Source: Macrostomum lignano
Lineage: Eukaryota
NCBI GenBank assembly: GCA_002269645.1
Contig: NIVC01001503.1
Coordinates: 1 to 64,000, forward strand
Direction: 5' to 3'
Length of the DNA stretch: 64,000 nucleotides
Shown: positions 10,923 to 48,339 of the stretch, piece after piece
Layout: each line of letters opens with the position of its first letter
Position numbering within the stretch: the first letter of the stretch is position 1
Program-made: the position numbers and the translations under genes
Notes under the pieces: model-generated
Seen by the model: the letters and a program-made list of their open reading frames with translations, nothing else
Told to the model about the DNA's origin: nothing
Database searches by the model: none

Positions 10923-13893
10923 TCCTCTTATATCTATAGTCTAGATTATATGAATAGCTTTCTGAAAAGTGAATTTATGTTTTTAATCTCGAGTATAAGT
11001 TGTTTCTTTAATCTATGATATGAACAATTATTATTTCATAATTTAAAACCATTTATACTTGTGCTATATAATTTGATATATTTGCACTAGCATAGGCCTA
11101 GGTTTCCCTGTTAGAATTTTTGCTCAAAATGCATAGACGAAAATTAGGATTTTAATATTTATAGTCCCTAATTAAAAGGGATGGCAATAAACATATTGGT
11201 TATTATAATTTTGAGCTACTTTACTATGTAAGGGCCTATCACACAATGCCATAATTGGTGTAATGTAGACTAAAGTACTATAAAACCTTGGTGAAATGCA
11301 ATATATTAGAAAGGCAATAAACATAAAAATGTCAGTTTTTATCAAACTAAATTGCTAGTATAATGCAACATGCCATGCTACAACCTAGCACCCTAGTGCA
11401 ATAATCTTTAGCATGATATGACAAGTGACTAATTAAGTATATGAATAATTTATATAATACTAATCAATTTATCTATCTATGAAAAAGAGGATATAAAAAT
11501 TATTTTCAACAAGAGTGATATTCACATTCACTTCAGTTTGTATTATAATTTTTTCTATAAAATATACCATGTTTATCATAAAATAAATTTTTTTGCTTTA
11601 AATCTTAGATTAACCCAACCGATCAAATCAAAGGAGTTGTAAGAACCTTTCAGTTGAATAGTTTCGAGGTCCAAAAGGGTCTGTCAACTTAGCCTAGGCT
11701 CATAAAGTGGAGCCCGACACCCAAGAAACATATGTACATTGTACACAAATGATACGCTATTCTGCTCACAGTGACACCAGAAAGCTGGACTTGAGAAAAA
11801 AATTACAAAAATTGAACCTGGGATAAAAGAGAACAATCAAGGGGACAATTAGGGACTCCACCTGATAAGCTTAAGTTTACATGATGAATGATAGTAATCA
11901 TTGTTCTTAGAAATTATACTTTTTAAACTAGAAAATATCTTTAGCAGCAACACGTAAATTAGGCTGAAAAAAGTATTCACCAAACATTTTTTAAATACAT
12001 CAAGATTTTTTAGATTTTTTATTTAGTGATGTACAAACAAATAAAATATTTTGTTTTAGCCAACAATTTAAATTATAAAACCGTTGGAAATTTTTTCCAC
12101 CTTAGGCCCCCCCCTCTACTACACTAGTGAAGGCCTAGTGAAGTGGGCTGATTGGCAAATCCAGGGGCCATAGTCCTCTCAGCTAGGATCGAAATAAATC
12201 GCCACATTTTTTCTTGTTCTGACGACTTTTGACCTAATTATACTACTTTTAGTCGCTTTTCGAATGTTGTACTAAGTCCAAGGGCCTATATACTATATTT
12301 GTTGCTTAGGCCGTAGGGCCTATTCTACTATACTAGGTGGGCCTAATTGTTTGCATCATAATTGTTTTGAAATTTTTTTTTAAATTTGATTTTTTATGCA
12401 TATTGGCAAGTTATAAAACCTTTATTTAAATATATAGCATTTAGTAAATTAAATTGACAACTTTTAAACTAGCCAAGGCTAAAGATTTAAGTTATTATTA
12501 TTAAGTCTAAGACTAATTTAACTAATAAAATTTAGTTAATATTAGTTATTTAGTCAGGTAAAATTAATTAAAAGATTTTGATATTATAATTGAGACAAAA
12601 TTGGCTAGGCCTAGGCCTATTAAAATTTCTTAATCCCATCAAATAAGATTGCTAAAAATAATATAATATTTTGTCTTTAGTTTTATAATTTAAGGCTAAC
12701 TTAATTTAGTTTAGTAACTGCAATTAGTTATAATTTAGTTTGGTTTAAAATAGGGTTTAAAAAACTTTTTATCTGTAGTGTAAGGCAAAATAAAGAACCT
12801 AATATTTGATTGATAATTGCAAGCTAGTGTAAGAAAAAGAAAGAGAAGAGACATAAGAAATAGGTAAGAAAGGAAAAACATAACAAGGTAAAAAGTGAGA
12901 AGACTAGGGCCTTAATAAGAGAAAAAAGACGCAAAAAGGAAAGAAAATAGAAAAAAGAGAAAAAAAGCAAAACAAAGAAAGTGTAGATTAGAGAACAAAG
13001 AGCTAAGAAGAAAGGCAAATCTTGAATAAGCCTGATTGCCATTGTAACATTTCAAAGGACTTAAAGGCTGGATAGAATGGCTTTGTAAGCTGCATATGGC
13101 CTATAGGCCATGGCTTTATAAGCTGCATATGGCCTATAGGCTAGAGTCTGCTGACCCTTGGACTTGGTCTATGTTGGCATGGCCTAATGATGATTTCCTA
13201 TTTAATATTCATTTAACCTTTAATGTCTTTTTTGCTCTTTATAATAAAGCTTTCAGTTTTTATATGATAAATTGGTTTCTTTGTCTAATCCTAAAAGAAT
13301 AAAAAAGAGGATGAAAGTACTACAAGAGAATACAATACAATATTTAGGTAGTTAAATAGATATTTAAGGTATTAAATATTTAGATATAAAATATTTAGTA
13401 AAATATTTAGATTTATCAATATAGGTAGGCCTAATGATATATAGTATATACATTTGGCAAAAATTCAATCAAAATTGCTTAAGAATTGCAATCTCTAGAG
13501 CATTATAGACAAGTAAACATACAAACAAATATTAGAGATTTAGTATAACTTTAGTATAACTTTGTTAGTTATTTTAGAAGTCCCATCATAATACTTCTAT
13601 TGGTTTATTAGGCACTTGATAAGACAAGTTATTTCTATTCATGGTTGACAAAGTAACAAGTGTTATATCTTAAATCTTAGGTGAATGTTTTTTATATCAC
13701 AATTGTGTGTCTCTAGAGTTGACAATTTATTTTTAAAAAAATAAAGAGACAAACTTATGGCCATGGAATCTATATATGTAATGTTTGTTTTCCATGGATA
13801 TAATTCTGAGATGTCCTTGTAACTGTAGTTGGCATAATATCCCACTGCAGCTTGTTGCCATATGCTATACAAACACAAATTTCAGGACTCAGA
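10481..13893. other. AT-rich, CpG-depleted domain between divergent Sec24 and NF-YB (probable bidirectional promoter region)
   Basis: About 15 CpG in 3.4 kb by eye. I saw none in 10481-10989 or ~12932-13893. Flanking exons are CpG-dense. Confidence 0.8.
12755..13140 (+). mobile_element. Heavily GC-eroded copy of the hAT-type MITE
   Basis: cttgaataagcctgattgccattgtaacatttcaaaggacttaaaggctgga aligns to cttgagcgggccggattgctattgtgaagtttcaaaggacccgagggccgga of the other copies, mostly by G>A/C>T changes. Confidence 0.7.
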
Positions 13894-14422
13894 CGAGCAC
13901 TCTGGCTCCGGGTTTGGGGCAACGCCAGGCGCGACAGCCAACGCCGGAGGAGGCAGTCTGGACGATGGCCGACCGATTGGCCGGTGCTCGCCAATCCGGG
14001 ACCAGGACCGCTTCCTGCCCATTGCCAACATATCGAAGATTATGAAGCGAACAATACCGGAGACTGGCAAAATCACTAAAGAGGCGAAAGAGTGCGTGCA
14101 AGAGTGTGTGTCCGAGTTTATCTCCTTTGTCACGTCCGAAGCGTCGGACAGATGCCAGGAGGAGAAGCGGAAGACAATGAACGGCGAGGACATCCTGACG
14201 GCGATGCAGGCTGTCGGCCTAGACAGTTACATTGAGCCGCTGAAAGTCTACCTGATGAAGTATCGGGAGGCCAATAAATTGGAGGCGGCCAACGAACGGG
14301 CCGCCAATCCGCAGGGCGGCGGCGGCACCGGAGCAGCGGGCGGAGCCAGCGGCGGTGGCGGTGACGACGGCGCTGTGGGTGGAGGCGGAGCCGGCGGCAC
14401 CGTGTTTGTCTCTTTCAACTGA
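13862..14422 (+). CDS. NFYB: Nuclear transcription factor Y subunit beta (histone fold)
   Basis: [17 protein letters not shown]...[43 protein letters not shown]. The true start is uncertain (acceptor-like tttcag ends at 13885). AATAAA at 14501. Confidence 0.95.
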
Positions 14423-29984: not shown

Positions 29985-31295
29985 TGTGGGTTGGTCAAAA
30001 TGTTCTGCAACCCACTCTTCTGTAGCCGTTTTGGCGTAACCAAATAATCTGAAATGCTTCACACCGAAGGCTTACTTTGCTGTTTACTTGTTTCGTGTAA
30101 GGAATTTCGTTCAAATTCATGAATTAGTTTCAGTTACGACTGGACTCCGACCATATCCTGCTTTCAACTTCTGCATGGAACCTTCAAAAGACAACATTCG
30201 CTTTTAATGTTTTGTTGTGCAGTAAATTTATATGCGCATGCAGCTGGATCGAAGATCTGTGGTTTACTGCAGCTGCACCCGCGTCTTTGGACACCGTTGC
30301 GCGCCAATTTGCCAATTTTCTAACTCGATTGTTTGAGCGTCCAAAACGAGAGCCGGTCTCGGTGAAGGACATCCGTGACCGACGGGTCAGTGGCCCTCGC
30401 AGAAGCCACTGTGCGCAAGGATCGAAGCGTAAAGCAAAGATTCCTTGCATACGAGCTCGGTACGTGCGAGCTATGGTAGCGCTCACAACATCATGCAAGA
30501 GGATGCAGCTTAGCTGCACCAAGACCTGCACATGTTGGATGGCCGCGCATCTGCTCCCAGCGGAGCAGCGAGCTGAGCCTGTGCCGCGCATCTGCGACTG
30601 TGGCTGCAGATGTTCGAACCCCAACGGCCGCAGAAGGCTGTCTGACGTCGTGACAGGCGACGAATGTAGAACTTCTTCACGATGGAGTGTAAGCAGTCCA
30701 ACATGGTCTGTCTGATCGAAGATGGGCCTATAAGGCCTGAGGTCGTGAAGAGCGGTTTCAGAAACAGGAAGAGGATGTTCACAATTTGATTCCCTCAACT
30801 CCTAAGTGTGGTGCATCACGGTGGACATCCTTCAAGGGCAGCACTGTGACTACCAAGCATTAACCGAAATAATGCTATACATGTATGCTGCCGGTTGTGC
30901 TGCAAGAGCGGCGGGTGCTGCTGCACCACGACAATTCGGCATTGCACACTGCTACTGCAACTCAGGCATTTCTGGAGCAGCAGGTGGTTCAGCTGCTGCC
31001 CCACTCACCTTACTCACCAGAACTCGCACTCTGCGACTTCTGGATGCTTTCGAAGCTGCGGTCAGTAATTTCTGGGAGGCCATGACAGGGAGACACCTGG
31101 CTCGAACGGTCAAGCAGAACTTAAGAGGACGCCCACATCAAAAGTACCTCAGTTGCTTCCAGGCGGGATGGATACCAATGCAGCGATGCATGTATATAGA
31201 AACTGAGGAGAATTCGGAGGAATTTGTGCACCACTTTTTTCCTGGACATTTTAATAAAGCCAGTTGCAGAACTTTTTGATCTGCATTCCTCCTAC
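29985..31295 (+). mobile_element. Decayed mariner element (frameshifted transposase)
   Basis: Fragments LSCTKTCTCWMAAHLL (WVPHxL-like) and VLLHHDNSALHT...PHSPYSPELALCDFW. Inverted end cores gtcaaaatgttctgcaac (29994-30011) and gttgcagaactttttgat (31263-31280) match at 16/18. Length is ~1.3 kb. Confidence 0.8.
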
Positions 31296-32169
31296 TCGTT
31301 AGCTTACTCCATTCGACTTATATGTACCTGACTTAGCTGCAGGAGTCCGATGCGCTTGGAATCTCACCCGGCCACTGGTTGATCCTGGTTGATCCAATAG
31401 TAGTCGTGAAAAGAGATGCTGGGAGTTGGTTGGGGGCCAGCTACATGTACATGTATTACCCAACTACATGTAATTACGCGATAGACTGCCAAGAGATGAC
31501 ACACAACCCTATTTGACATTTTCATTTTAGAGACACCTTATTATTATAACGCACAGGTATGCATTTCGGGATAAGAATTAATACCTAGGGAGAACTAGGG
31601 ATCTCAACGATATTTAAGTTGTCCTTTTTAGTGCCCGGATGTGCTGCCGTCAGTTCAACAAACCGCATGTCCTAGGGGTGCTTTGAACACTTTTGGGAAC
31701 GATCGTATACCCCTTTGGGTGGACTTGTGTGTCAGCGTGGGAAAAGGTTCTCCAGAACACCTGCACCAAAAAGATGACATAAGTTATTAAAAATTCGAGT
31801 GAAAATATATTTATTATGAAACAATTAATAAAATTTCACTCGAAAAATTGAAAAACTATTCATATAGCCTGTCTATAGAGTTATAAATCTTTATAGTTCC
31901 GGTTTTAATGCAAAAACGATTTGAGATCAACTCGTTTAATTTTGGTTGGACAGGTTTTATAAAATTTCTGCGCGGCCGCCGCGGCCTGTACGAGTGACAA
32001 TAGACGAATGAAGGAATTACAACTTCCACGAAAAGTAAAATGGATATTCGAAAAAAATATTGTTAGTCGCTATAATTAGATACTGTCCGCCGTCACTTAG
32101 GCCCCTATGTTTTAATAAAGTATTAGACCATGGCTGGCTATAGTATAAGGTAAAGCTCACGTCTGTCGT

Positions 32170-35100
32170 CTAGGCTACCAGTCTAACAGTCTTGGAGTTA
32201 GCCCCTAGTTGTGCCCATAGCTAGTAGGCCCAGAGCTTAGTTATCTTATCAGTATCTTGGTTTGAAGATAAGATTTTAATCTGCATGTTCTTTATATAAA
32301 CATTGAATCATATAGATAAGATAGGGACCATTCTTATTAATTACATAAGAGGCGGCATAGGCCCTAGAAATAGTAAAAGAGATCAAACATTTGATACATG
32401 AGTTTTATTATTAGAGGTCATGCTAATAAAATGCTTCGAATTATATTTGTTTATTGATTTAGATTGTATTAGGCCAAGGCTTATAAGTATATATAGGCAG
32501 GCCTAGGCCCTAGGCCTAACTTATGATATAAGCTAAGTTTTATATCAAATAAAAAATATAGATCAAAATCTAGTCTAGTGTAAGCCTAGGGCTGTTCCAT
32601 AGTCCAGATCATGCTGGGTGCATGCCCATTCTCTAAAATATGCTGATATTGCGACAATAAATGACCTTTTTTATATTGCATAATAGAACCAACCTTATTA
32701 GCAGATAATTTGGTTGATTTTTGTGCTTTTTTTCCACAATACTATTTATAACATGAAATTGATACATGCAAAGATTTGTTTAAATGCTTTTTACAAGCTT
32801 AAAAACTATAAAGCTAGAAATTTAGGCCTATGCTTAAAATTAACTTTTTTCATTTTTTCTACTTCATAATAACTCTTACACATGATTCTATAAAGTGCAT
32901 ACTAGGTGTGTATGCATACTTTTTTCTTAGGAATGATGCATGCCCAAATTTTTGGGTGTATACTACATGATCCAGGGTGTTGGGACTGCTTAGCTAAAGT
33001 AAGATAAAAAGGTAGATGTAGGTGGTAGGCCTATATAGACCCTATCTATTACTATTTAGTATTGCCCCATCTTGATTGAGTTGCTTTTTCACCTTAATTT
33101 GTGCACTAATCAAAGTCATTTGCTATCTAATAATGTCAATTATAATTTCAAGAAAATTAATATAGGCTCTAGAACTTTTATATAGTGTTTAAAATTAAAT
33201 ATTCTTATATAAATTTTATTGCTGAAGTTAAAAGACTTGATACCTATTTTAGATTTATTAGCAATTTCTCTTATAATAGAATAGACTAGAGTAACCAAAT
33301 TTCTAGTTTAGTTATATATATATATATTATATATATATAACATATTATAAAAGCTTTAGGATTGATTTTACTAAATTTGATTAATAACAAAATTATATAA
33401 GTACTACTAAACTACTTTGGATCATAGTATATACCCAAAAATATAGGTGTACATTGGTCTTAGACATCAAAAGTTTGGAGTGCATATCTGGCATGCACTC
33501 AATGCAATAATGTGAAAGAGTTTATATTAAGTGAAAAATTTCATAAATTCATTTTAAGCATAATTTCAAGCTTTTAAAACTTTTTTTGATATGCATCACA
33601 TTTATTTGTAATTTGTAATTTTTGTTTTGGCATACACCTAGCATGATCTGAATTATAGTATTAGTAGTATAGCTAAGTATCTAGCTAAGATTAATATTTT
33701 AGTCATTATCTAAAGCTTATATTACCTAGTTTTATCTGGAATATAGCTATTTTGTCTATTGTCAGTTTGTAATGTTTGTTTGCTAGTAGATAACTGACAG
33801 TTCAATAATAGTGGTACTTATATTAATAATACCACTGGTAGCATTAACTACTTAATTTGGGAAATTTGCAATAGGTTTTATCCTATTCATTATGAATTTT
33901 ATAAATAAACTAAATATATATCAAAGTAAATACATAGTATACTAAAACAAAAAACAAAAGTTCTTTTTGTTTTAGTAAATCTTGTGATTAAAAAAAATTT
34001 TTTTATATTGTATTGACTATTTGTAGGTTTCTAAAGTATAATCAAGACTATAGACTTTATTCATATGGTAGTAAAACTATTATATAAGAAGCTTGTAGCC
34101 TAAAGAAAGGTATTATTATTGCATATGACAAAGTACTTTTCATAGTCTATAGTCTTTTAAGTTATTTTATTTGCATTAGCAAGAAAAAATGGCTTAAGCT
34201 CCTACCACAGTATATTTAAAATACTTTAAATGTTTAATAGGTTTTATTTCTCAAGGTCAAATCTTATGACAAACATTTTAGCTGGAGCCTATTAATTTCC
34301 TAGTGAATTGGTACAAAACTATACTCATTATTAGTAGAGGCTGGAAAATATCACATTTTTTAGATTTTTAAGACTTAAGAGCTATGCTTTTGAGATAATC
34401 AAGATTCAATAAAGTTTGACATTAAGCCTTATTAGCATCTAGTAAGCCTATTTACACTAGTTTATCTATTAGTGCTAATATTGTTATTTGTTATGTACAA
34501 AAATAATAATAGAAAGAAAAACAATTATTATATAATATTAAGCTTGTTAGTAACTTGATGTATATCCAATATAAATCTGATAATATCATAGTTACCAATT
34601 ATCACATAGTCATAAATCTTGACTTTTTTGATATCTCAAAAACAAGATCAAGATAGAGAAAAGTGCCAAAATCTTGATGATCAAGATAGAGATTGAGATA
34701 TTGTCTAATTGCAACTCATTAGATAGATCACATTCTTTTCTTTAAAATGACATCTTATTTGTACAAATTGCTCTTTTAGTTTTGTTTAGGCTGGCTGTTT
34801 TTCCTAATGCTTGGCAATGAAACTAGATATTTTGATTAAGTTTAGAGCTAATATATCTTGATAAAACAATTATACTCAAAGCATACTTTATGAAAAAAAA
34901 CTTAAAGACTTTGAAATACCTTAATAAAAGCAAAATAATTTTAAAAAATTAAATATATTTAATTTTATTCTATTTGATATCTGGTAATAAGTTTATTATT
35001 TATAGTATAGGTTTTGTAATTTTCTTACCTTAACTAAATTGTTTTTCCCTTTTTGATCTAATTCCCTATTAGAATATTTAACTAAAGGTTAGACAAAAAG

Positions 35101-35853
35101 AAATCATATAATAATTTTTAAGTCAAGATTTATCAAGACAAATGTTTGCATAAAAAATAGAACTTTATAATTATAATATTATAAACATTAATCTTATCTA
35201 TCTACTAGTCAGATGTGCAATCAGCAGTTTAGCCATAGCTAATGCATAATATATCTAAAGGCTGCATATGGCTGTTCAGTCCAAGGACGGGGAGGGGGGG
35301 TTGCCACACACTATCAATTACCCCAGCTAATGCTGGAATCCATTTTATAGCTAGGTAAACTGAAGCAATGCAGAGCTAGGTGTTTTGCTCAAGGACACAA
35401 ATTGTTCCAGTGGGATCAGAAATCGAACCCTAACCTTCAAGTTGTGAGTCCAATGCTCTAACCAATAGGCTACAATCTATTTATTTACATTTTAATAACT
35501 AAAAAAATCGCAGCTATGACTACAGAAATCTTTGAGAAAAGCCATAGCCATAACAACAGTTGTTTTCCACAGGCATATTCATAGCTCCTAGTTGCCATAG
35601 TCATAATTTTAGTGAAATTTAAATTTTATATTTCTATGAGTACAATATTCAATCTATGTACTTGAGAATTTATATTTTGTCTGTAGGTATTTCCTAAGTA
35701 TTCTGTTCATATTCTAAACTTCCTACCTTGCTGCTGATTTATTATTTAAGCTATATTTTTAACCTCACTGCTATGCCAATTATGGATTGGTTTAATCCTG
35801 TCTCTTTGTCAACCATTCTCATATGTTTGTTTCTAACACCTGCTACCTTTAAT
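32170..35853. other. AT-rich, essentially CpG-free domain between divergent FAM78 and hnRNP K
   Basis: No CpG seen by eye in ~32655-35286, and only a handful elsewhere. It contains eroded inverted repeats and an eroded SINE. Confidence 0.8.
35205..35478 (-). mobile_element. CORE-type SINE copy, transition-eroded
   Basis: It aligns to the other copies with changes such as gcgtacgg>gcatatgg, tacagctgggtgaa>tatagctaggtaaa and ccgacgct>ccaatgct. Confidence 0.85.
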
Positions 35854-36857
35854 CGTCACTAATTTTGTTGACAACAGTCTTCTCTTTGTAGTCTTCTTTG
35901 CGAGCAATCTTTGCAGATTTTACTGCAACTGACTTCCATAGTTTTTCCATCATTTTCACTTCTCTGCTCCCTTTGTGAACTGCATATCTGGCGATTGCTT
36001 CTAATCTACCTGTTTTTATTGCCGCAAATACACGCTCGTAGTTCACAGTATCTCTCCCACTATTTATGAATTGCAGCTGTGCATTGCGACCGGGCTCCCC
36101 CGCCGTCCCCCCTGCTCTGTAGCCAGCCAACCTCCGCCAGCTAGTCAGCCTATCACCGCTTAAGAGTCCCCCCAAGGATTCCCCTCAACCCCCTGGGCAA
36201 TAGCGAACAACCTCTGGTAATCGAGAGAAGAGTTCAAAGCAGGAGAGACACCGTTGAGTCAAAATACTTTTGAGCAGCATTTTATGGAAGCTGTCAAGTT
36301 CGGTGAGGCTTTTTTATATTTCAATTGTCAATTCCTCTGCGTTAAAAATGTATAAATATTCGCTAGAGGGCTGTGGGCACCCCGGCGCGACATCATTCCA
36401 CAACTCAGCGCTGAGGCCATGCTGCCCATTCCGCCAACTCCCTGAGCATGAGCACATTCAAGCACGCCGATGCTTTACGCAGTACACACGCTTACACAGC
36501 GACCCTTACTTACTTTTCTAATCTTGAGATGTACACCCTCTGTGCCTTGGGGGTTGGCCCTCGTGGCTGTTGAATCCTCTGGAAAAATTTTGTGCGCGTT
36601 TCAGACGCTTTTATCGCTGAGCTGCTTTGCCCCCTAATTGCAGCATTTTAAGGTTATTGCAGGTTATCTCAACTCAGCGGTAAAGCGTCTGGCTCCTCGA
36701 CCCGGGAAATTTATAAATCACGCATGCAAGGACGAGGGCCGACCCCAAGGCGCAGAGGGTGTACATGTCGGGGGCGCTGTACACCCTGTGTGCATGCTCA
36801 GTGATCAGCGTGCTGAAAGGGCCTGACATGACTGCTTGTTCTTTAATTAATAATTCA

Positions 36858-37140
36858 AAAATTGATTACACCTGCCCCGATTGGGCCAGATGTGCAACTA
36901 ACAACTCAAACGCGGCTAGTACCGCGGCTGTTCATTCCAAAGACTTTAAGGTCACCACACCACCACACACCTCAATTACCCCAGCTAATGCTGGCGCCCA
37001 TTTTACAGCTGGGTGAACTGAAGCAATGCAGAGTTGAATGTCTTGCTCAAGGACACAAATTGTTTCAGTGGGAATCGGGAATCGAACCCTCGACGTTCAA
37101 GTCGTGAGTCCGACGCTCTAACCACTAGGCCACCACAACC
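36858..37140 (-). mobile_element. CORE-type SINE copy whose 5' end runs into a minisatellite
   Basis: Reverse complement of the full SINE. It ends ...ctctaaccactaggccaccacaacc. Confidence 0.85.
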
Positions 37141-37493
37141 CCCTACTAGGCCACAACCCTCCTACTATACCACAGCCCTCCTACTAGGCCACAACCCTCC
37201 TACTATACCACAGCCCTCCTACTAGGCCACAACCCCCTACTAGGCCACAAACCCCTACTAGGCCACAACCCCTACTAGGCCACAACCCCCTACTAGGCCA
37301 CAACCCTCCTACTATACCACAGCCCTCCTACTAGGCCACAACCCCCTACTAGGCCACAAACCCCTACTAGGCCACAACCCCCTACTAGGCCACAACCCCC
37401 TACTAGGCCACAAACCCCTACTAGGCCACAACCCCCTTACTAGGCCACAACCCCCTACTAGGCCACAACCCCCTACTAGGCCACAACCCCCTA

Positions 37494-38803
37494 CGAGGGT
37501 CACTCAGAAAGTTCTTAGCCTGAACACGAAAACAGCAACAAATGAACTAAAAAACGACTACAAGTGCTCAAAATACTCTCCACCGGCATTGATACAGGCT
37601 TGCATCCTGTGAAACCAGCTGTCGAAGCAATGCCGCCAATCCTCATCCCGGAGCTCCTCGATGATGTTTTTGAACTCATTCACAGCTTCTTCCGGTGAAG
37701 AAAAGACCTGGCCCTTCAGAATCTCCTTGCACTTCGGAAACAGAAAAAAGTCGCACGGTGCCAGGTCTGGACTGTAAGCAGGGTGAGTCATCAGCTGGAC
37801 CCCACAGTCAGCCAGAAACTCCAGAGTTTGAGCCGCCGTGTGCGCGCTGGCGTTGTCGTGGTGCAGAAGCACCCCACGCATTCCGCACCTTGGGCGCCTC
37901 TGGCTCACAGCAGAAAAGACCTTGGGCAGGCAAACCGTTGTGTACCAGTCAGCGGTGACTGTCTGGCGATCTTCAAGTGAAACGGAAGCCACATGCCCAG
38001 TGCGCATGAAGAAACAGGCCACCATCTGCTTGCCGACACTCCGGCTGCGTCGAAACTTTGTGGGGCTGTCCTCGTCTCCAAAGGTCCACATGGCTGACTG
38101 GCGCTTGCTTTCGGGGTCGTATTGATAAATCCAGGTCTCATCGCCCGTGAGGATGTCCCAGATACGCCGGCTGGTCCCGGATTCGAATTTCTGCAGCATG
38201 AATCGGCACCAAGCCACCCTGGTGTCCTTCTGCACGTCCGACAGCTGATGGGGGATCCACCGGGAAGCCAGCTTCCGCACTCCAAGGTGTTCGTGCATAA
38301 TGGCGTGCACACTCCCCGATCCAATACCGATCTCCTGCTGGATCTGCTGGTAGGTCACTCGCCGGTCAGCGGCAATCATGCTGGACACAGCGCAGATATT
38401 TTCTGAAGTCACTGCGTCACAGGGTCTCCCGGATCGATGTTCATCTTCGAGGCTTTCTCGACCTCGGCGAAACTCAGCGAACCAGTTTTTGACGGTTGCG
38501 TATGAAGGACATACATGGGTGAAAACGTTCTGTAAAGTTTGATACGATTCGGTCGGCGACTTGCCTTGCTTGAAGTGCAGGTACATCATTGCTCTGAAGT
38601 CGCGATTTTCCAGCTTCATTGTTGAATTGAAGAACTCAGGGGGTGAACTGACTTTAACTCGCTGCAGTGGACTCAAAAGTGGCTGCTTCTGTTTGAAATT
38701 TTTGCTGCGATACTTTTAAAAGTTGGTCTTTACCATAGACAAATTTCATGCTTCTACGTCTCGTGGATCCTACTCAGGCTAAAGACTTTCTGAGTGACCC
38801 TCG
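37494..38803 (-). mobile_element. Full-length mariner transposon (1310 bp)
   Basis: 30-bp TIRs cgagggtcactcagaaagttcttagcctga (28/30 identical). TA duplication at 37492-37493 and 38804-38805. Intact transposase. Confidence 0.97.
37558..38619 (-). CDS. Mariner transposase, 353 aa, D,D34D
   Basis: N-terminal HTH region, WIPHQL, TGDETW, HHDNA, and YSPDLAPCD with 34 residues between the 2nd and 3rd catalytic D. No stops or frameshifts. Confidence 0.95.
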   Translation of the reverse strand: MKLENRDFRAMMYLHFKQGKSPTESYQTLQNVFTHVCPSYATVKNWFAEFRRGRESLEDEHRSGRPCDAVTSENICAVSSMIAADRRVTYQQIQQEIGIGSGSVHAIMHEHLGVRKLASRWIPHQLSDVQKDTRVAWCRFMLQKFESGTSRRIWDILTGDETWIYQYDPESKRQSAMWTFGDEDSPTKFRRSRSVGKQMVACFFMRTGHVASVSLEDRQTVTADWYTTVCLPKVFSAVSQRRPRCGMRGVLLHHDNASAHTAAQTLEFLADCGVQLMTHPAYSPDLAPCDFFLFPKCKEILKGQVFSSPEEAVNEFKNIIEELRDEDWRHCFDSWFHRMQACINAGGEYFEHL

Positions 38804-39125: not shown

Positions 39126-42100
39126 ATGGATCACACAAATGAGCCACCAAGCAAACGACAATACGCCGGAAGCGGAGCGCGCAACGAAATGCGCTTTTTA
39201 ATCCCGTCTAAGGTAAATCACGTGATCAATACGCACTGATCTATTAGTGTAGAATAATTCATGTGCTCACTGTCTCATTCTGATTGCAGATGGCTGGCGT
39301 TATCATTGGCAAAGGCGGAGCCAACATCAAGCGTTTACGCGAAGAGGTGAGCACATCGAATACTTTGCCATGTATATATTTTTAAATTAATGTTTAGTCA
39401 GCAGTTTGCTATTAATATCACGCTTGTTTTATTTTCTATACTTAATAATACTATAGTACCATTATTGTTTTACTAATTTCGTATTGAAAAGTCTACAAAT
39501 ATGCTAGTCGTACATTGTGCACGAATTCATTTTATAATACTGACAGTAATAGAACTATATTATTAACAGCTAGATCAAATATCCAAAGTTACCAGTCGAA
39601 AACTTACAAAATCCAAAAAGTACGTAGAGAACCCGCTGTACAGATCCCACCCCCACTCTACTCTCTTTTCCCTTTCCAGTTCTCTGCCAAAGTGTCCGTA
39701 CCCGATTCCAATGGCCCCGAACGGTACTGATGAAGTCGCTGATAATTTCCCTGTTATTGTTGCGTAATATTTGTATGTTTTTCAAACTGACGCGTTCCTG
39801 AAAATTTGCTTTTTTAATCTTCCTGATAAGGCTGTTTATTTTCAATCCACATCATTCGTACTTTTTAATTGTCTTTTCAATAAAACCATTACTAATCCAC
39901 AGTGCTTCGGATCTAGATTGGCATTTGACTGTCAGTGTCTCGGATCTAGATTGGCATTTGACTGTCAGTGTCTCGGATGTAGATTGGCATTTGACTGTCA
40001 GTGTCTCGGATCTAGATTGGCATTTGACTGTCAGTGTCTCGGATGTAGATTGGCATTTGACTGTCAGTGTCTCGGATCTAGATTGGCATTTGACTGTCAG
40101 TGTCTCGGATCTAGATTGGCATTTGACTGTCAGTGTCTCGGATCTAGATTGGCATTTGACTGTCAGTGTCTTGGATGTAGATTGGCATTTGACTGTCAGT
40201 GTCTCGGATGTAGATTGGCATTTGACTGTCAGTGTCTCGGATGTAGATTGGTATTTGACTGTCAGTGTCTCGGATGTAGATTGGCATTTGAGTGTCAGTG
40301 TCTCGGATCTAGATTGGCATTTGAGTGTCAGTGTCTCGGATCTAGATTGGCATTTGACTGTCAGTGTCTCTGATTTAGATTGCCATTTGACTGTCAGTGT
40401 CTTGGATGTAGATTGGCATTTGACTGTCAGTGTCTCGGATCTAGATTGGCATTTGACTGTCTGTGTCTCTGATGTAGATTGGCATTTGACTGTCAGTGTC
40501 TCGGATGTAGATTGGCATTTGACTGTCAGTGTCTCGGATGTAGATTGGTATTTGACTGTCAGTGTCTCGGATGTAGATTGGCATTTGACTGTCAGTGTCT
40601 CGGATGTAGATTGGCATTTGACTGTCAGTGTCTCGGATGTAGATTGGTATTTGACTGTCAGTGTCTCGGATGTAGATTGGCATTTGACTGTCAGTGTCTC
40701 TGATGTAGATTGGCATTTGACTGTCAGTGTCTCTGATGTAGATTGGCATTTGACTGTCAGTGTCTTGGATGTAGATTGGCATTTGAGTGTCAGTGTCTCG
40801 GATCTAGATTGGCATTTGACTGTCAGTGTCTCGGATGTAGATTGGCATTTGACTGTCAGTGTCTCTGATGTAGATTGGCATTTGACTGTCAGTGTCTTGG
40901 ATGTAGATTGGCATTTGAGTGTCAGTGTCTCGGATCTAGATTGGCATTTGACTGTCTGTGTCTCTGATGTAGATTGGCATTTGACTGTCAGTGTCTCGGA
41001 TCTAGATTGGCATTTGACTGTCAGTGTCTCGGATGTAGATTGGCATTTGACTGTCAGTGTCTCGGATCTAGATTGGCATTTGACTGTCAGTGTCTCAGAT
41101 CTAGATTGGCATTTGACTGTCAGTGTCTCTGATGTAGATTGGCATTTGACTGTCAGTGTCTCAGATCTAGATTGGCATTTGACTGTCAGTGTCTCTGATG
41201 TAGATTGGCATTTGACTGTCAGTGTCTCAGATCTAGATTGGCATTTGACTGTCAGTGTCTCAGATCTAGATTGGCATTTGACTGTCAGTGTCTCGGATCT
41301 AGATTGGCATTTGACTGTCAGTGTCTCGGATCTAGATTGCCATTTGAGTGTCAGTGTCTCGGATCTAGATTAGCATTTGACTGTCTCGGATCTAGATTGG
41401 CATTTGACTGTCAGTGTCTCGGATGTAGATTGGCATTTGACTGTCAGTGTCTCGGATCTAGATTGGCATTTGACTGTCAGTGTATCTTTTAGAGGAACCT
41501 AACATTTAGTATGTAGTAAATAAAAAGCTGCTTGTATGTTACTGTATTGTTGTTAGGCATGCTTTAAATAACCATTGACACATCTCATTACTAACAGTAA
41601 TTTAGATGGAATGACAGGTTTCTGATTAGTGTAAAGCTTTTGAAACCGAATTCAAGAATTTATGTTGCGTTATTGGTTGAGAGAAAGTTTCTGATGAAAT
41701 CTTAATGGTCAGTTTTTCATCGGTTTGATTTGTTAATATCTGTTCTTGCTATTCTATTAACAGTTGAATTGCAAGGTTCCTCCAACACTCGGAACCTTCG
41801 CATTGGCACTCTGTCAAACAGATGACTTATTTTAATAGAGACGTGAAATAGAAATATTAACCACTTCTCTTTCACGTCACCTACATTCTTACGTCACGTT
41901 TCTTATTTCACGTCACGTCATTCTTACCTGCTGCATTTCTGAGCAGCATATGATGCTAGTATGGGTAGAAATACTACTATTTGAGATGGTAAATAAGCCA
42001 TGTTCTAGTAGAATTACAGTCGTGTCTGACTCAAGTTAGTTTGTGAACTGATTTGAATAGACTAAATGAGATTATTATCTCTATGTTCTTCATCCCCCAA

Positions 42101-44097
42101 GAGTTTAAATATTCCCCAGATTTCACTTTTGCCTATTTTTGTGCAAGATATTTCAGTCTCCAAATTCACAACCCCAAGTTTCACAGTCCCAAATTTCACA
42201 ACTTTAAATGATATTTCTAATTGGGGTTGCAAAAGTTTTGGGGTTTGGGGCAAATCAGGTTTGAGAATTAAAAAAATTAGGAGTCTACAAAAGCATCGTC
42301 TTATCATACTACTTGTTCAACGACTCGTACTACTTACACTCTGTATAATTTTTTGGAAGTCCAGAAGGTCAAAAAGTTGTCAATGAAGCGCTAAAACAAA
42401 CAAATAATTCTGTTCCTCTGATGTATCTTCTGCTTTCGAATATCTAAGTGCCCGTTTTTTATTATTTAAAAACCCGCCATCCAACCCCGCAGAGTTCTGT
42501 GCTTGGAGGGCGAGCAGCCGATGCTGGAATCCCTGCTAGCCGACGTGCTCAACACTATGGTTGTCGAGGGCAACAGCGGCCGCGGCGACCGGGACGGCCT
42601 GGGCACCCAGCAGGGCGCGGTGACCAACACCGGGGATGTGGACCTGCGCCTGCTGGTGCACCAGTCACAGGCCGGCTGCATCATCGGCAAAGGCGGCAGC
42701 AAGATCAAGGAGCTGCGCGAGGAGTCCAAGCTGCGCGCCTTAAAAGTGTATTCGGTTGCTTGTCCAGTGTCCACCGATCGCGTCATTCAGATGATCGGCG
42801 CCCCGGCCGAGCTTCTTGGCGCCGTCCGCATGGTGTCCGAGCTGCTGGAATCGGCGCCGCCTAAAGGCCAAATTGCCGGCTACGATGCGCGCAATTTCGA
42901 CGAATTCGGCGCCGAACAGTACGGCGGCTGGCCCGGCTCCGGCCGCTGGGGCGTCGGCCGGCAAGACCACTCCGTGGCCGCCAGCGCCGTCGGCATGCCC
43001 CCTGGCCCGCCCGGCTATCCGCCTGGCGGCGCTTTGGCCGCCGCGGCCGCCGCTGCTCACATGCGCGGAGGCGTGGCTCCGCCGCCGCCGCAGGCTCGCG
43101 GACTCGGCCCGCCAGTTGGTGTACCCATGGCCGCTGGCGGCGCCGCCGGCGGGATGCCGTACGGTGCTCCGCGCGCTCCACGCGTGCCAGCCGGTCCGGA
43201 GGTGACCCAGCAGGTGTCAATCCCGGACTCACTGACCGGCTCCATCATGGGCCGGGGCGGCCAGCGCATTAAGCAGATCAGGATGGAATCTGGCGCCGAT
43301 ATTAAAATTGATCGGGGCGACCCCGGTCAGGATCGCATTATTACTATTAGGGGCACCCAGGAGCAGATACAGAATGCGCAGTACCTGCTGCAGATGTGGT
43401 GAGTATAGTTTGCATATTTGTTTATGTTACACTCGCGATTCCTTCCCAGGTTTTGATCTGCCAGTTGGCCCTCAGTGTGGAAGACCAGTGATTGTTGCCC
43501 AGACATTTTTTATAACATTATACTCCTCATAGTTTGACACTTTTGGACAACTCTCTCGGTCTTCCGTATTGATTGCCTTCGTTCGACATTTTACTCATAT
43601 TGACTTGTGTGCGCGAGCTCAGTGTCTTTTTATGTGATTCCCCCACACCACATCTGAGTCATTGTGCATGTGTAGACCGCTCTACCCCCACACCCAGTCC
43701 ATCTGAAGACTGCTCTATCCCACACCCAGTCCATCTGAAAACCGCTCTATCCCACACTCTAGTCCATCTAAAGACCGCTCTATCCCACACCTTAGTCCAT
43801 CTGAACACCGCTCTATCCCACACCCTAGTCCATCTGAAGACCGCTCTATCCCACACCCAGTCCATCTGAAGACCGCTCTATCCCACACCATAGTCCATCT
43901 GAAGACTGCTCTATCCCACACCCTAGTCCATCTGTAGACCGCTACCCTAGTCCATCTGAAGACCGCTCTACCCCACACCCTAGTCCATCTGAAGACTGCT
44001 CTATCCCACAGCTTGTTATTTTAGTCAAGCAAATAACCTGAACAAAGTTCCCCCTCGTTAACATTTCAGCGTGAAGAAGTACTCAGGACAGTACTAA
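39126..44097 (+). CDS. HNRNPK: Heterogeneous nuclear ribonucleoprotein K (3 KH domains), 5 exons
   Basis: Exons 39126-39212, 39290-39346, 39680-39723, 42493-43398, 44070-44097 join in frame. KH1 EMRFLIPSK|MAGVIIGKGGANIKRLREE|FSAKVSVPDSNGPER; KH2 AGCIIGKGGSKIKELRE; KH3 GSIMGRGGQRIKQIR...IQNAQYLLQMCVKKYSGQY*. The start codon is tentative. Confidence 0.93.
39907..41483. repeat. Minisatellite, 33 bp unit (gatctagattggcatttgactgtcagtgtctcg), hnRNP K intron 3
   Basis: About 47 units. The 482-aa ORF is the stop-free repeat frame. Confidence 0.97.
43675..44010. repeat. Minisatellite, 33 bp unit (ctagtccatctgaagaccgctctatcccacacc), hnRNP K intron 4
   Basis: About 10 units ending about 60 bp before the acceptor at 44069. 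Confidence 0.93.
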
Positions 44098-45285: not shown

Positions 45286-45540
45286 ATGGCCGATCATCAA
45301 TCAGTCCGGCCGGAGGGCCGCATGATCGACCTGGTCGATGCTGATTGGCTGGACGATCGGCTGCCCCGCGAGTCCGTGCCCGTGCTGCCTAGCGAGCTGC
45401 CGGATTTGGATCCGGACTCGCAGGACGAGCAGGAGGCGGCCGACGATAACAAGTGGACAGAGCTGCAGCTGATGCGCATTAGGCGGATTGCCGAGCAGCA
45501 GGTTCGCGGCCATACTGCCGGGCCTGCGCCGCCAAGCTAG
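45286..45540 (+). CDS. ANAPC13: Anaphase-promoting complex subunit 13
   Basis: RPEGRMIDLVDADWLDDRLPRESVPVLPSELPDL...DNKWTELQL parallels APC13 (DGRILDLIDDAW..D.LP.E.V..P..ELP...KWTDL.L) as recalled. 84 aa. Confidence 0.85.
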   Translation: MADHQSVRPEGRMIDLVDADWLDDRLPRESVPVLPSELPDLDPDSQDEQEAADDNKWTELQLMRIRRIAEQQVRGHTAGPAPPS

Positions 45541-45591
45541 AGTCCTTTCGCTTCATTCCGACTCTGTCTAGTGCTTTTGCTAAACTTTATC

Positions 45592-46437
45592 TCATCAGGC
45601 CACTCCCCCCGCTAGCAGTTAGTGACTGCAATATCATCAGGCCACTCCCCCCACTAGCAGTTAGTGACTGCAATATCATCAGGCCACTCCCTCCGCTAGC
45701 AGTTAGTGACTGCAATATCATCAGGCCACTCCCTCCGCTAGCAGTTAGTGACTGCAATATCATCAGGCCACTCCCCCCGCTAGCAGTTAGTGACTGCAAT
45801 ATCATCAGGCCACTCCCTCCGCTAGCAGTTAGTGACTGCAATATCATCAGGCCACTCCCCCCGCTAGCAGTTAGTGACTGCAATATCATCAGGCCACTCC
45901 CCCCGCTAGCAGTTAGTGACTGCAATATCATCAGGCCACTCCCCCCGCTAGCAGTTAGTGACTGCAATATCATCAGGCCACTCCCCCCGCTAGCAGTTAG
46001 TGACTGCAATATCATCAGGCCACTCCCCCCGCTAGCAGTTAGTGACTGCAATATCATCAGGCCACTCCCCCCGCTAGCAGTTAGTGACTGCAATATCATC
46101 AGGCCACTCCCTCCGCTAGCAGTTAGTGACTGCAATATCATCAGGCCACTCCCCCCGCTAGCAGTTAGTGACTGCAATATCATCAGGCCACTCCCCCCGC
46201 TAGCAGTTAGTGACTGCAATATCATCAGGCCACTCCCCCCGCTAGCAGTTAGTGACTGCAATATCATCAGGCCACTCCCTCCGCTAGCAGTTAGTGACTG
46301 CAATATCATCAGGCCACTCCCCCCGCTAGCAGTTAGTGACTGCAATATCATCAGGCCACTCCCCCCGCTAGCAGTTAGTGACTGCAATATCATCAGGCCA
46401 CTCCCCCCGCTAGCAGTTAGTGACTGCAATATCATAA
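45592..46437. repeat. Minisatellite, 42 bp unit (atcatcaggccactccccccgctagcagttagtgactgcaat)
   Basis: About 20 near-identical units starting about 50 bp after the APC13 stop. Confidence 0.97.
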
Positions 46438-46904
46438 AGTTATGGTGCGAATACACGAATTCTCTGGCCCTGACGCAAACAGTTAAGACCCCAAAACCGA
46501 AAGCAATCAAAGTACGTATTTGATTCCTTGAATTCATTCGTTTTTCTGTATTTTCGTGCTTGTCGCTTATGATGAAATGCTGCCAAATTTAATTACCAAA
46601 TACAAAATATTACTTCTTATGACTTCATAATTTGTAAGTAGACGAGAAGTGGCCGGTTGTAGATTGTTGATGCCGAAGGCTAATAGTTGCCGCGCTGTCG
46701 GATAAGTGGCCGAAATTTGGAAATTGGCCACTTGTCCGAACGCCTGCACGCGTTGGCGTGCAGACGGAAACAACTTGGTATTGTTTGCATTAGGCTGCTT
46801 GGGTCGGCTCGGCAGTCAGTTGTCGTAGACACGGAGAGACCCGATTGGAGGGCCAACAGATTGACTCGTGTTCTAAAATGAATTAAAATGCTTCGATTCC
46901 CATT

Positions 46905-47490
46905 GGATTCAGTATCCTCACCCAAGTCTCACCCACTAGATTCGGTATCCTTACCCAAGTCTCACCCACTAGATTCGGTATCCTTACCCAAGTCTCACCC
47001 ATTGTATTCAGTATCCTTACCCAAGTCTCACCCACTAGATTCGGTATCCTTACCCAAGTCTCACCCATTGGATTTAGTATCCTTACCCAAGTCTCACCCA
47101 CTAGATTCGGTATCCTTACCCAAGTCTCACCCACTAGATTCGGTATCCTTACCCAAGTCTCACCCATTGGATTTAGTATCCTTACCCAAGTCTCACCCAC
47201 TAGATTCGGTATCCTTACCCAAGTCTCACCCACTAGATTCGGTATCCTTACCCAAGTCTCACCCATTGTATTCAGTATCCTTACCCAAGTCTCACCCACT
47301 AGATTCGGTATCCTTACCCAAGTCTCACAAATTGGATTCAGTATCCTTACCCAAATCTTACCCACTAGATTCAGTATCCTTACCCAAATCTTACCCACTA
47401 GATTCAGTATCCTTACCCAAATCTTACCCACTAGATTCAGTATCCTTACCCAAGCCTCACAAACTAGATTCAGTATCCTTACCCAAATTT
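46905..47490. repeat. Minisatellite, 33 bp unit (cccaagtctcacccactagattcggtatcctta)
   Basis: About 17 units. Confidence 0.95.
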
Positions 47491-48339
47491 CATCCATTTG
47501 ATTTAGAATACTATTGAATTCTGACTTTATCAAGTGGCTACTAGCAGTAGGTTATAACGAAATTAACTACGAAAACATTTTATTGCTTTGAATACTATTA
47601 TTTCTTTAGTACTTAAGGTCGGCTGAAAAGCCTGATGTTAGCTTTTTCCTACTCACCCGTAGGAATTGCCGTTCTATCGCCTACAAAAAATAACACATTT
47701 GTTCACCCATGAGGTCCTATTCAATTAGGAGTTTTTTATATCTTATGAGGATATGGTGACTGCTTTGAAAACTATTACATAGTCACCTTTGTTTTTTAAG
47801 CTGACAGTCAGCATTAGCGTGTTTCCTGTATGCTCATCCTGTTTGTATTATTACCGAGGCGAAGGGATCGCAACGGTACTGGATGAAGATCTCTGCTTCT
47901 CTCCTTGTCCGAAGCGCAGGTGCAATTTCGAGCAGGAAAATAAGCCAGTAGGCAATCGACTCTTTCTGGTTTGCTAATCTTGACATCCTCTCTCGGGTGC
48001 TTCTTCCTTTTGCTAATTGCCCCCCTCCTGACCTGCTATTTCAAAAGTTGCTCGCCCTGCAAACGCAAGGGTGAGGTTCTCAGTGCTAGCGGGGCTGAGG
48101 AGGAAAAACAAGGCGGAGGTGAGCTGATGCGTCCCTATAATTTTAACCAGCTCCGGTTCTCAAGTTTGAAATTATTCTACCCTTTCCTTGTTCTCGAGAA
48201 AATTAGTTCGTCTTCGACACTTGTGTTTTGCGTATGTCAGTCGCTGTCTGAAAGTGTCATAAAAATAAACAAGTTTTAGAGTTGGCTGACTCAAATTCTT
48301 GTTAGTACCTTCAGGCTATTTTGCGAACTGATTTCTGAT

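What the first reader, a model, noticed from the sequence alone, without database searches (positions are those of the whole stretch)
32170..35853. Multi-kb CpG-free domain with RIP-like C>T/G>A erosion in an animal genome
Seen: no CpG over about 2.6 kb (32655-35286) by eye, although roughly 40 would be expected at ~25% GC, and neighbouring DNA is CpG-rich. The SINE at 35205-35478 differs from its sister copies mostly by transitions toward AT. These hit CpG (gcgtacgg>gcatatgg, gtcgtg>gttgtg) and also CpA/TpG (tacagctgggtgaa>tatagctaggtaaa; tctgaagg>tctaaagg). Known: CpA>TpA hypermutation is the hallmark of fungal RIP, and invertebrate CpG loss normally sits in gene bodies. Inference: a localised cytosine-deamination process (dense CpG plus non-CpG germline methylation, or a deaminase) acts on a bounded domain upstream of two divergent genes (FAM78 and hnRNP K).
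Basis: partly seen in the sequence, partly recalled or inferred. Interest (0 to 1): 0.85.

Follow-up and report, generated by a model that had tools for sequence, protein, structure and literature searches.

The report
Old CpG-decayed AT-rich transposon block
The CpG-free stretch is real, but it is one of many AT-rich blocks of old short transposon copies in this flatworm genome whose CpGs decayed to TpG/CpA, as methylated cytosines do, and it is not a fungal-RIP-like or locus-specific hypermutation domain.

Summary
Window 32652-35288 is a 2636-bp run with 0 CpG against 41 expected, at 25% GC. The whole block 32170-35853 has 6 CpG against 72 expected.

The RIP-like, locus-specific reading is mostly not supported.
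- CpA/TpG are not depleted: the RIP index (CpA+TpG)/(ApC+GpT) is 1.20.
- About 30% of the block is recognisable old high-copy short repeats. Two families are AT-rich in their consensus, and their copies elsewhere show the same CpG>TpG/CpA decay.
- The CpG-free state is shared by three duplicated copies of the locus, so it predates the duplication.
- Young MITEs inserted into the sister copies keep CpG at about the expected frequency.
- Recent polarised substitutions are not AT-biased.
- In 120 kb of other genome sequence, about 10% of 500-bp windows are CpG-free, and 3 of 12 ten-kb pieces hold an AT-rich CpG-free run of at least 1 kb.

A regional effect is real. The in-block SINE lost 14 of 15 CpGs, whereas equally diverged copies in GC-normal DNA lost about 43%. 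CpG retention in family A does not track copy age.

The genome (Macrostomum lignano Mlig_3_7, by assembly statistics) encodes DNMT1, DNMT3 and DNMT2 and gave no APOBEC_N match. The best reading is a footprint of regional germline CpG methylation on AT-rich transposon blocks. Methylation itself was not measured. Interest is modest.

The parts
32170..35853 (.). AT-rich, CpG-poor non-coding block (27.9% GC, 6 CpG against 72 expected)
   Evidence: Only one ORF of 60 aa or more (35849-36184) touches its right edge, by 5 bases. No Rfam match lies inside it.
32653..35287 (.). Core run with no CpG (0 against 41 expected; GpC o/e 1.83; CpA 1.09; TpG 1.03; TpA 1.04)
32618..32945 (.). Copy of short interspersed repeat family A (at least 1294 candidate copies in the genome, about 80% identical to this copy). 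It keeps 1 of 14 ancestral CpG sites: 4 TG, 5 CA, 2 TA, 2 other.
33418..33562 (.). Partial family-A-related segment, inverted relative to 32829-32974 (73% identity)
34335..34709 (.). Copy of short interspersed repeat family B (at least 484 candidate copies; consensus 23% GC). All 6 ancestral CpG sites have decayed.
35205..35478 (-). Decayed SINE-like copy (44% GC against a 55.5% consensus). It keeps 1 of 15 CpGs; non-CpG divergence is 10.8%. The strand is inferred from the tRNA-like B-box segment and was not confirmed by ARAGORN, which found no tRNA in a sister copy.
36925..37136 (-). Sister SINE copy of the same subfamily in GC-rich DNA, used as control. It keeps 7 of 9 CpGs at 9.1% non-CpG divergence.
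11001..13900 (.). Second AT-rich, CpG-poor block of the same kind in the window (CpG o/e 0.24, GpC o/e 1.55). It contains a repeat of about 210 bp with at least 1135 candidate copies.
33399..33400 (.). Empty site in the window where the sister copy on contig C1371 carries a young 284-bp MITE (8-bp TSD AGTACTAC, terminal inverted repeats, 12 CpG, 46% GC)
33842..33843 (.). Empty site where the C1371 copy carries a young 395-bp MITE (8-bp TSD ATTAACTA, terminal inverted repeats, 17 CpG, 38% GC)
32370..32371 (.). Empty site where the C2907 copy carries a 304-bp MITE (terminal inverted repeats, 9 CpG)

Best explanation
The block is ordinary host DNA of the flatworm Macrostomum lignano. It is an old, non-coding, AT-rich stretch built at least partly from ancient short non-autonomous transposon copies, and it is one member of a genome-wide class of such blocks.

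Its CpGs were lost one by one through CpG>TpG/CpA transitions. That is the signature of spontaneous deamination of 5-methylcytosine. The loss ran at roughly 12 times the background per-base rate, whereas neighbouring GC-normal DNA loses CpG at only about 1.3 to 4 times background. The inferred mechanism is long-term germline CpG methylation by DNMT1/DNMT3, targeted to these AT-rich transposon blocks and not to gene bodies. A milder general excess of C>T, about two-fold in all contexts, accompanies it in the same compartment.

Most of the AT-richness was inherited from transposons that were already AT-rich, and was not created in place.

Shown here: the CpG-free run, the TpG/CpA products at ancestral CpG sites, the independence of decay from copy age, the three-copy conservation, the genome-wide occurrence, and the presence of DNMT1/3.

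Inferred: that methylation is the cause, and that it is regional in the germline.
For: (1) CpG-specific loss. The block has 0 of 41 expected CpG while CpA and TpG stand at o/e 1.09 and 1.03.

(2) Products at ancestral CpG sites. Family A has at least 14 sites that are a CG/TG/CA mixture across 11 copies. Family B has 6 such sites. The in-block SINE lost 14 of 15.

(3) A regional effect, not an age effect.
- Family A copies at 3.4-3.5% non-CpG divergence keep 0-1 of 14 CpGs, while copies at 7.2-7.9% keep 5-7 of 14. Heterogeneity gives chi2 p=4e-5.
- The in-block SINE keeps 1/9 against 7/9 for its sister copy at similar non-CpG change, 16 against 20 substitutions.
- The CpG decay ratio is 11.8x in the block, 1.3-4.4x in other old copies and 1.9x in pooled young copies.

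(4) Genome-wide class.
- In 120 kb of other contigs, windows below 30% GC have CpG o/e 0.14-0.34 and GpC o/e 1.7-1.9, as here.
- The o/e histogram has a spike at 0-0.1, with 23 of 240 windows.
- AT-rich CpG-free runs of at least 1 kb occur in 3 of 12 ten-kb pieces (L046, L049, L050). L046 holds about 3.1 kb with a single CpG.
- Other such blocks also contain old high-copy repeats.

(5) The state is ancient. The shared sequence is CpG-free in all three duplicated copies, on C1503, C1371 and C2907.

(6) The enzymes are present. DNMT1 matches PDB DNMT1 at E=2e-64, DNMT3 matches DNMT3A at E=5e-19, and DNMT2-like exons are also found, each in three copies. Reviews state that M. lignano keeps DNMT1 and DNMT3 and has low 5mC (PMC9246332, PMC11292947). 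[quoted passage not shown] Low bulk 5mC would fit a methylated compartment that has almost no CpG left; this last point is inference.
Against: No methylation data were available, so methylation of this block is inferred only from its mutational footprint.

TpG/CpA are barely above expectation (1.03-1.09), whereas vertebrate-type CpG decay usually leaves a clearer excess.

The regional effect on the SINE rests on one in-block copy. Family A rests on 11 copies, two of which (L056, L057) look like duplicates.

Flank CpG o/e separates CpG-retaining from decayed family A copies only modestly, about 0.45 against 0.21 (my sums over the per-copy flank counts).

The young MITEs in the sister copies keep their CpGs. 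This is compatible with slow decay but gives no positive evidence that methylation is still active.

The roughly two-fold non-CpG C>T excess is not explained by CpG methylation alone.

About 70% of the block could not be assigned to a repeat family.
Confidence: 0.62

Rival explanations
1. Pure age effect. CpG hypermutability is or was uniform across the genome, for example through a past era of global methylation. The AT-rich blocks are then simply the oldest DNA, and GC-normal DNA consists of younger transposons, satellites and constrained exons.
For: Families A and B are old; their copies are 74-83% identical to the in-block copy. Young SINEs keep 395/435 CpGs and young MITEs keep theirs. 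The state predates the locus duplication. Recent substitutions show no AT bias.
Against: CpG retention in family A does not follow non-CpG divergence: 0/14 at 3.4% against 7/14 at 7.9%. Two SINE copies of the same subfamily with similar non-CpG change differ at 1/9 against 7/9 CpG kept.
Confidence: 0.15
2. Methylation-independent effect of AT-rich DNA. Easier strand opening raises spontaneous cytosine deamination in all contexts, giving a self-reinforcing drift to AT (the Fryxell-Zuckerkandl type feedback, recalled from memory). CpG loss would then be a by-product.
For: Non-CpG C>T per C/G site is about twice as high in CpG-decayed family A copies (84/694) as in CpG-retaining copies (14/255), p=0.002, and this holds in CpA, CpC and CpT contexts alike.
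Against: A two-fold general rise cannot produce a roughly 12-fold CpG-specific rate and a zero-CpG run. The in-block SINE has no more non-CpG C>T than its sister copy, 8 against 7. Recent substitutions imply an equilibrium GC near 40%, not continued decline. This explanation more likely adds to the main one than replaces it.
Confidence: 0.1
3. A RIP-like process, or an AID/APOBEC-type deaminase, hypermutates C>T at CpG and CpA within a bounded domain upstream of the FAM78-like and KH-domain (hnRNP K-like) genes.
For: The in-block SINE has 14 non-CpG C>T changes, 7 of them at CpA, relative to the young consensus. TpA/ApT is 1.09 in the block against 0.84 for the window. The block consists partly of multi-copy repeats.
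Against: (CpA+TpG)/(ApC+GpT) is 1.20, so CpA is not depleted. With a same-subfamily control, non-CpG C>T is 8 against 7, and only 3 of the 8 are at CpA. Thousands of young, near-identical SINEs and the young MITEs inside the block are untouched. The block type is genome-wide. No APOBEC_N domain was found at E<=0.01. Recent substitutions are not AT-biased.
Confidence: 0.05
4. Foreign insert, contamination or misassembly.
For: There is an abrupt GC drop from about 50% to 25%.
Against: The block is present, collinear with its flanks, on three contigs of the assembly. It contains host repeat families with hundreds to thousands of copies and a host SINE.
Confidence: 0.01

Closest known systems
Mosaic DNA methylation of invertebrate genomes, with CpG-depleted (germline-methylated) and CpG-normal compartments (described in PMC11292947 and PMC9246332)
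   Same: The CpG o/e distribution is bimodal. CpG-specific decay to TpG/CpA is seen. DNMT1 and DNMT3 are present.
   Different: The depleted compartment here is AT-rich non-coding transposon DNA, not gene bodies. The exons in this window have CpG o/e 0.72-1.04. Methylation itself was not measured.
CpG decay of methylated transposon copies (as for Alu and L1 in mammals; from general knowledge)
   Same: Ancestral CpG sites in a repeat family appear as CG/TG/CA mixtures among copies. The decay rate is about 12 times the background.
   Different: Only a subset of copies or regions is affected. Most SINE copies in GC-normal DNA decay at only about 2 times background.
Fungal RIP and the AT-rich, transposon-derived isochores it creates (for example Neurospora and Leptosphaeria; from general knowledge)
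   Same: AT-rich blocks made of degenerate repeats alternate with GC-normal, gene-bearing DNA. There is an excess of C>T transitions.
   Different: There is no CpA>TpA signature (index 1.20). Young repeats are spared. The repeat families were already AT-rich in their consensus. The loss is CpG-centred.
GC-content-dependent cytosine deamination feedback proposed for isochore evolution (Fryxell and Zuckerkandl; recalled from memory, not checked here)
   Same: Faster CpG decay and a higher general C>T rate are seen in AT-rich surroundings.
   Different: This is a modifier of the rate, not a targeting mechanism. It does not explain the sharp kilobase-scale blocks.

Membership tests
RIP (repeat-induced point mutation) | C>T mutation concentrated at CpA, giving (CpA+TpG)/(ApC+GpT) below about 1.03 together with high TpA/ApT | tested here: not met
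   The index is 1.20 in the core and 1.27 in the whole block. CpA o/e is 1.09 and TpG 1.03. Only TpA/ApT is high, at 1.09.
RIP (repeat-induced point mutation) | Acts quickly on duplicated sequences, so young multi-copy repeats are mutated | tested here: not met
   29 young SINE copies keep 395/435 CpGs with no C>T excess. Young MITEs inside the sister copies of the block have CpG at about the expected frequency. These elements are under 400 bp, so a length threshold could exempt them.
RIP (repeat-induced point mutation) | Transitions greatly outnumber transversions | tested here: inconclusive
   The in-block SINE lineage has 18 transitions against 6 transversions. Polarised W- and C1371-branch substitutions in the block give 20 transitions against 13 transversions.
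RIP (repeat-induced point mutation) | A RID-type cytosine methyltransferase homologue | not tested
   The PF00145 matches in the genome resolve to DNMT1-, DNMT3- and DNMT2-like exons. No specific search for RID was made.
5mC-deamination-driven CpG depletion (germline-methylated compartment) | CpG-specific depletion with GpC unaffected | tested here: met
   CpG o/e is 0.00 and GpC o/e 1.83 in the core. The same pattern holds in AT-rich windows of other contigs.
5mC-deamination-driven CpG depletion (germline-methylated compartment) | Ancestral CpG sites replaced by TpG or CpA independently in different copies | tested here: met
   Family A has 14 such sites and family B has 6, each a TG/CA mixture across copies. 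The in-block SINE lost 14 of 15 CpGs, and all 8 CpG-site changes scored against the same-subfamily sister were transitions.
5mC-deamination-driven CpG depletion (germline-methylated compartment) | Maintenance and de novo CpG methyltransferases encoded in the genome | tested here: met
   DNMT1 matches at E=2e-64 and DNMT3 at E=5e-19 against PDB, each in three genomic copies. Reviews agree (PMC9246332, PMC11292947).
5mC-deamination-driven CpG depletion (germline-methylated compartment) | 5mC actually present on the compartment in germline DNA | not testable with these tools
   No bisulfite or nanopore data were available. The Wasik et al. 2015 paper is not held in the library.
Canonical invertebrate gene-body methylation | CpG depletion located in the bodies of broadly expressed genes | tested here: not met
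   Exons of the Sec24-, NF-YB-, KH-domain- and FAM78-like genes have CpG o/e 0.72-1.04. The depleted block has no ORF of 60 aa or more inside it. Introns and transcript structure were not examined.
AID/APOBEC deaminase editing | An AID/APOBEC-family deaminase encoded in the genome | tested here: not met
   PF08210 (APOBEC_N) has no match at E<=0.01 in the six-frame genome search. Other deaminase clades were not searched.

The most novel reading that the evidence does not exclude
Macrostomum lignano may direct dense germline cytosine methylation, at CpG and possibly at non-CpG sites, specifically to kilobase-scale AT-rich MITE clusters and not to gene bodies. This would raise C>T in every context there. 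It would be an animal counterpart of plant or fungal repeat-targeted methylation that produces AT-rich, CpG-free islands. It would also explain why bulk 5mC is low in this species, because the targets have already lost their CpGs.
Probability: 0.15. Interest if true: 0.6.

Novelty: new member of a known kind. Interest (0 to 1): 0.3.

Why it matters
[quoted passage not shown] The mutational footprint here makes a concrete prediction that can be tested cheaply. If M. lignano methylates its germline DNA, the historical targets are AT-rich transposon blocks, roughly a tenth of sampled windows, and not gene bodies. That would depart from the usual invertebrate pattern. For the scan itself, the result shows that this candidate is not an animal RIP and not a locus-specific hypermutation domain.

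Tried and rejected
(1) C399 as a third copy of the block. Contig C399 is 99.8-99.9% identical to window 1-16.5 kb, but the piece fetched at the projected position (C399:219000-228999) does not match the window. The third copy turned out to be on C1371.

(2) Naive polarisation of substitutions with C2907 as outgroup. The tree changes along the block: over 34250-34750 the window equals C2907 (0-1 differences per 250 bases) while C1371 differs. I excluded 33950-34800 and recounted.

(3) Comparing the in-block SINE only with the young consensus suggested a CpA-biased C>T excess, 7 of 14. With a same-subfamily sister copy as control the excess disappears.

(4) Larger random genome samples, and a set of decayed SINE copies with their flanks, could not be fetched.

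(5) ARAGORN found no tRNA in a sister SINE copy. Rfam found nothing credible in 31000-37500.

(6) Wasik et al. 2015, the only bisulfite data set cited for this species, is not in the held library.
Full report
**Observation.** The CpG-free stretch exists as described. The longest gap between CpGs in the window runs from 32652 to 35288. It is 2636 bp at 25.1% GC, with 41 CpG expected and none seen. The block 32170-35853 has 6 CpG against 72 expected. The chance probability is about 1e-18, or about 2e-14 if the window's mean o/e is used. The flanks have CpG o/e 0.98 on the left and 0.67 on the right. The block has no ORF of 60 aa or more inside it and no Rfam match.

**Source genome.** The assembly G000 has 764,410,778 bp in 5269 contigs. 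The Macrostomum lignano DV1 assembly Mlig_3_7 is reported as 764,424,962 bp in 5270 scaffolds (PMC5730564). The difference of 14,184 bp and one scaffold would fit the separately assembled mitochondrial genome. The assignment therefore rests on assembly statistics. The paper also reports heavy redundancy from extra chromosomes, which explains the duplicated copies used below.

**Dinucleotide signature.** The depletion is specific to CpG. In the core, CpA o/e is 1.09, TpG 1.03, TpA 1.04 and GpC 1.83. The classical RIP index (CpA+TpG)/(ApC+GpT) is 1.20, which is above the value of about 1.03 taken to indicate RIP. Only TpA/ApT, at 1.09, is raised. A second block at 11001-13900 has the same profile, with CpG o/e 0.24 and GpC o/e 1.55.

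**What the block is made of.** Genome searches with the two halves of the block found three collinear copies of the locus: the window on C1503, C1371:266902-270826 and C2907:38176-41067. They also found two interspersed repeat families inside it.
- Family A (window 32618-32945) has at least 1294 candidate copies, about 80% identical to this one. A partial inverted relative lies at 33418-33562.
- Family B (34335-34709) has at least 484 candidates at 74-82% identity.
- With the SINE at 35205-35478, recognised repeats make up about 30% of the block.

Consensus sequences from ten other copies of each family are themselves AT-rich: 30% GC for A and 23% for B. Much of the AT-richness was therefore inherited and not produced in place.

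**CpG decay in the repeat families.**
- Family A has at least 14 positions where the copies show a mixture of CG, TG and CA, which is the expected outcome of independent CpG transitions after insertion.
- Family B has 6 such positions.
- The in-block family A copy keeps 1 of 14 (4 TG, 5 CA, 2 TA). Seven of the ten copies from elsewhere keep 0-1, and three keep 5-7.
- Every family B copy keeps 0-1 of 6.

Retention in family A does not follow age. Copies at 3.4-3.5% non-CpG divergence keep 0-1 of 14, while copies at 7.2-7.9% keep 5-7. Heterogeneity gives chi2 p=4e-5. CpG mutability therefore differs between places in the genome.

**The SINE.** A consensus from 27 young copies is 272 bp, 55.5% GC, with 15 CpG. 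The in-block copy keeps 1 of 15 CpGs at 10.8% non-CpG divergence. Copies with 5.9-12.2% divergence in GC-normal DNA keep 4/7, 7/9, 2/7 and 7/12. Pooled, that is 20/35, Fisher p=0.001.

However, this copy belongs to an older subfamily shared with the copy at 36925-37136. With that sister as control:
- The in-block lineage has 8 CpG transitions against 1 in the sister.
- Non-CpG C>T is 8 against 7, and only 3 of the 8 are at CpA.
- AT>GC changes are 3 against 7.

The CpG decay rate relative to the per-base background is about 12-fold in the block, 1.3-4.4-fold in the other old copies and 1.9-fold in the pooled young copies.

**A milder general C>T excess.** In family A, the CpG-decayed copies have about twice as many non-CpG C>T changes per C/G site as the retaining copies: 84/694 against 14/255, p=0.002. 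This holds in the CpA, CpC and CpT contexts, at 0.146, 0.099 and 0.107 against 0.097, 0.033 and 0.022. It is not the CpA specificity of RIP. It could reflect faster deamination in AT-rich DNA, non-CpG methylation, or ancestral CpG sites that were not recognised.

**Age and current activity.** The sequence shared by the three copies of the locus is CpG-free in all of them, so the loss predates the duplication. The sister copies carry young MITEs with 8-bp target-site duplications and terminal inverted repeats:
- 284 bp with 12 CpG, in C1371 at window position 33399;
- 395 bp with 17 CpG, in C1371 at 33842;
- 304 bp with 9 CpG, in C2907 at 32370.

These keep CpG at about the expected frequency. 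After removing a segment where the tree among the copies differs, polarised substitutions on the two closest copies give GC>AT 10 against AT>GC 16 over 2608 sites at 29% GC. That implies an equilibrium GC near 40% and no ongoing erosion, although the numbers are small.

**Genome-wide occurrence.** Twelve 10-kb pieces from other contigs were examined (120 kb in all; ten at arbitrary positions, two fetched on C399 while looking for a paralogue).
- Windows below 30% GC have CpG o/e 0.14-0.34 and GpC o/e 1.7-1.9.
- The CpG o/e histogram has a separate spike at 0-0.1, with 23 of 240 windows.
- About 13% of windows are below 0.2.
- AT-rich CpG-free runs of at least 1 kb occur in 3 of the 12 pieces. 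One (L046) holds about 3.1 kb with a single CpG, the same scale as the finding.
- Two further AT-rich blocks that were tested also contain old high-copy repeats.

Some GC-normal CpG-free windows are satellites whose repeat unit lacks CpG, for example 53811-54914.

**Enzymes.** The genome has exons matching DNMT1 (PDB DNMT1, E=2e-64), DNMT3 (DNMT3A, E=5e-19) and DNMT2, each in three copies. It has no APOBEC_N match. Reviews state that M. lignano retains DNMT1 and DNMT3 with low 5mC levels (PMC9246332, PMC11292947), and PMC9246332 adds that methylation patterns are unknown in free-living flatworms.

**Interpretation.** The best-supported reading is a mutational footprint of long-term, regionally targeted germline CpG methylation on AT-rich transposon blocks. 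It is a member of the known mosaic-methylation and transposon CpG-decay phenomenon. It is unusual in that exons here are not CpG-depleted, at o/e 0.72-1.04. Methylation itself is inferred, not shown. RIP, a deaminase, a locus-specific domain, foreign DNA and misassembly are each contradicted by at least one direct test. A pure age effect, and a methylation-independent effect of AT-rich DNA, remain as weaker rivals or contributors.

**Verdict.** Novelty: a new member of a known kind. Interest: 0.3.

Noticed in passing
window 32825-32838 and 33028-33041; also the block at 11001-13900, L050:5248-6820 and L049:7386-9497: The palindrome TAGGCCTA is strongly enriched in AT-rich CpG-poor blocks. There are 2 sites in the core, 4 in the 11-14 kb block and 2 each in two blocks from other contigs, where about 0.05 per block is expected. 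AGGCCT is under-represented in GC-normal DNA, at 18 against 34 expected. GGCC is 3.4 times its first-order Markov expectation in the pooled blocks. The cause is unknown; it could be a repeat terminus, a binding site or a decay-resistant motif.
   Followed up: partly
window 31100-36670 against L055 (C1371:265800-272300) and L043 (C2907:35000-44999): The relationship among the three copies of the locus switches along the block. Over 34250-34750 the window is nearly identical to C2907 (0-1 differences per 250 bases) while C1371 differs by 12-14. Elsewhere the window is closest to C1371. In the 11-14 kb block C1371 is as distant as C2907 (92-93%), while C399 is 100% identical. This suggests gene conversion or recombination among duplicated chromosomes, or chimeric contigs.
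   Followed up: partly
L055 (C1371) at window-equivalent positions 33399 and 33842; L043 (C2907) at 32370: Three young MITE insertions with terminal inverted repeats are present in only one copy of the locus. The two in C1371 have clear 8-bp target-site duplications. The AT-rich block acts as a landing site for such elements.
   Followed up: yes
window 37558-38715 (- strand): An uninterrupted 385-aa mariner/Mos1-type transposase reading frame (HTH_48, Transposase_1 and DDE_3 matches) lies 1.7 kb to the right of the block.
   Followed up: partly
window 53811-54914: The second-longest CpG-free run in the window (1095 bp, 47% GC, 59 CpG expected) is a 43-bp satellite of about 26 units whose unit has no CpG. 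Its cause therefore differs from that of the AT-rich block.
   Followed up: yes
window 2153-4650, 37133-37498, 39800-41370, 45483-46523, 46882-47517, 52965-53456: The window is dense in tandem-repeat arrays that give long spurious ORFs. This is consistent with the high simple- and tandem-repeat content reported for this genome.
   Followed up: no
family A copies L059 and L061: Individual decayed copies show lopsided products at ancestral CpG sites, for example 10 CA against 3 TG in L059 and 8 TG against 5 CA in L061. This hints at strand-biased deamination or repair.
   Followed up: no
The KH-domain exon (42470-43402), the Sec24 zinc-finger exon (9234-10940) and the NF-YB histone-fold exon (13838-14422) were confirmed by Pfam.
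   Followed up: partly
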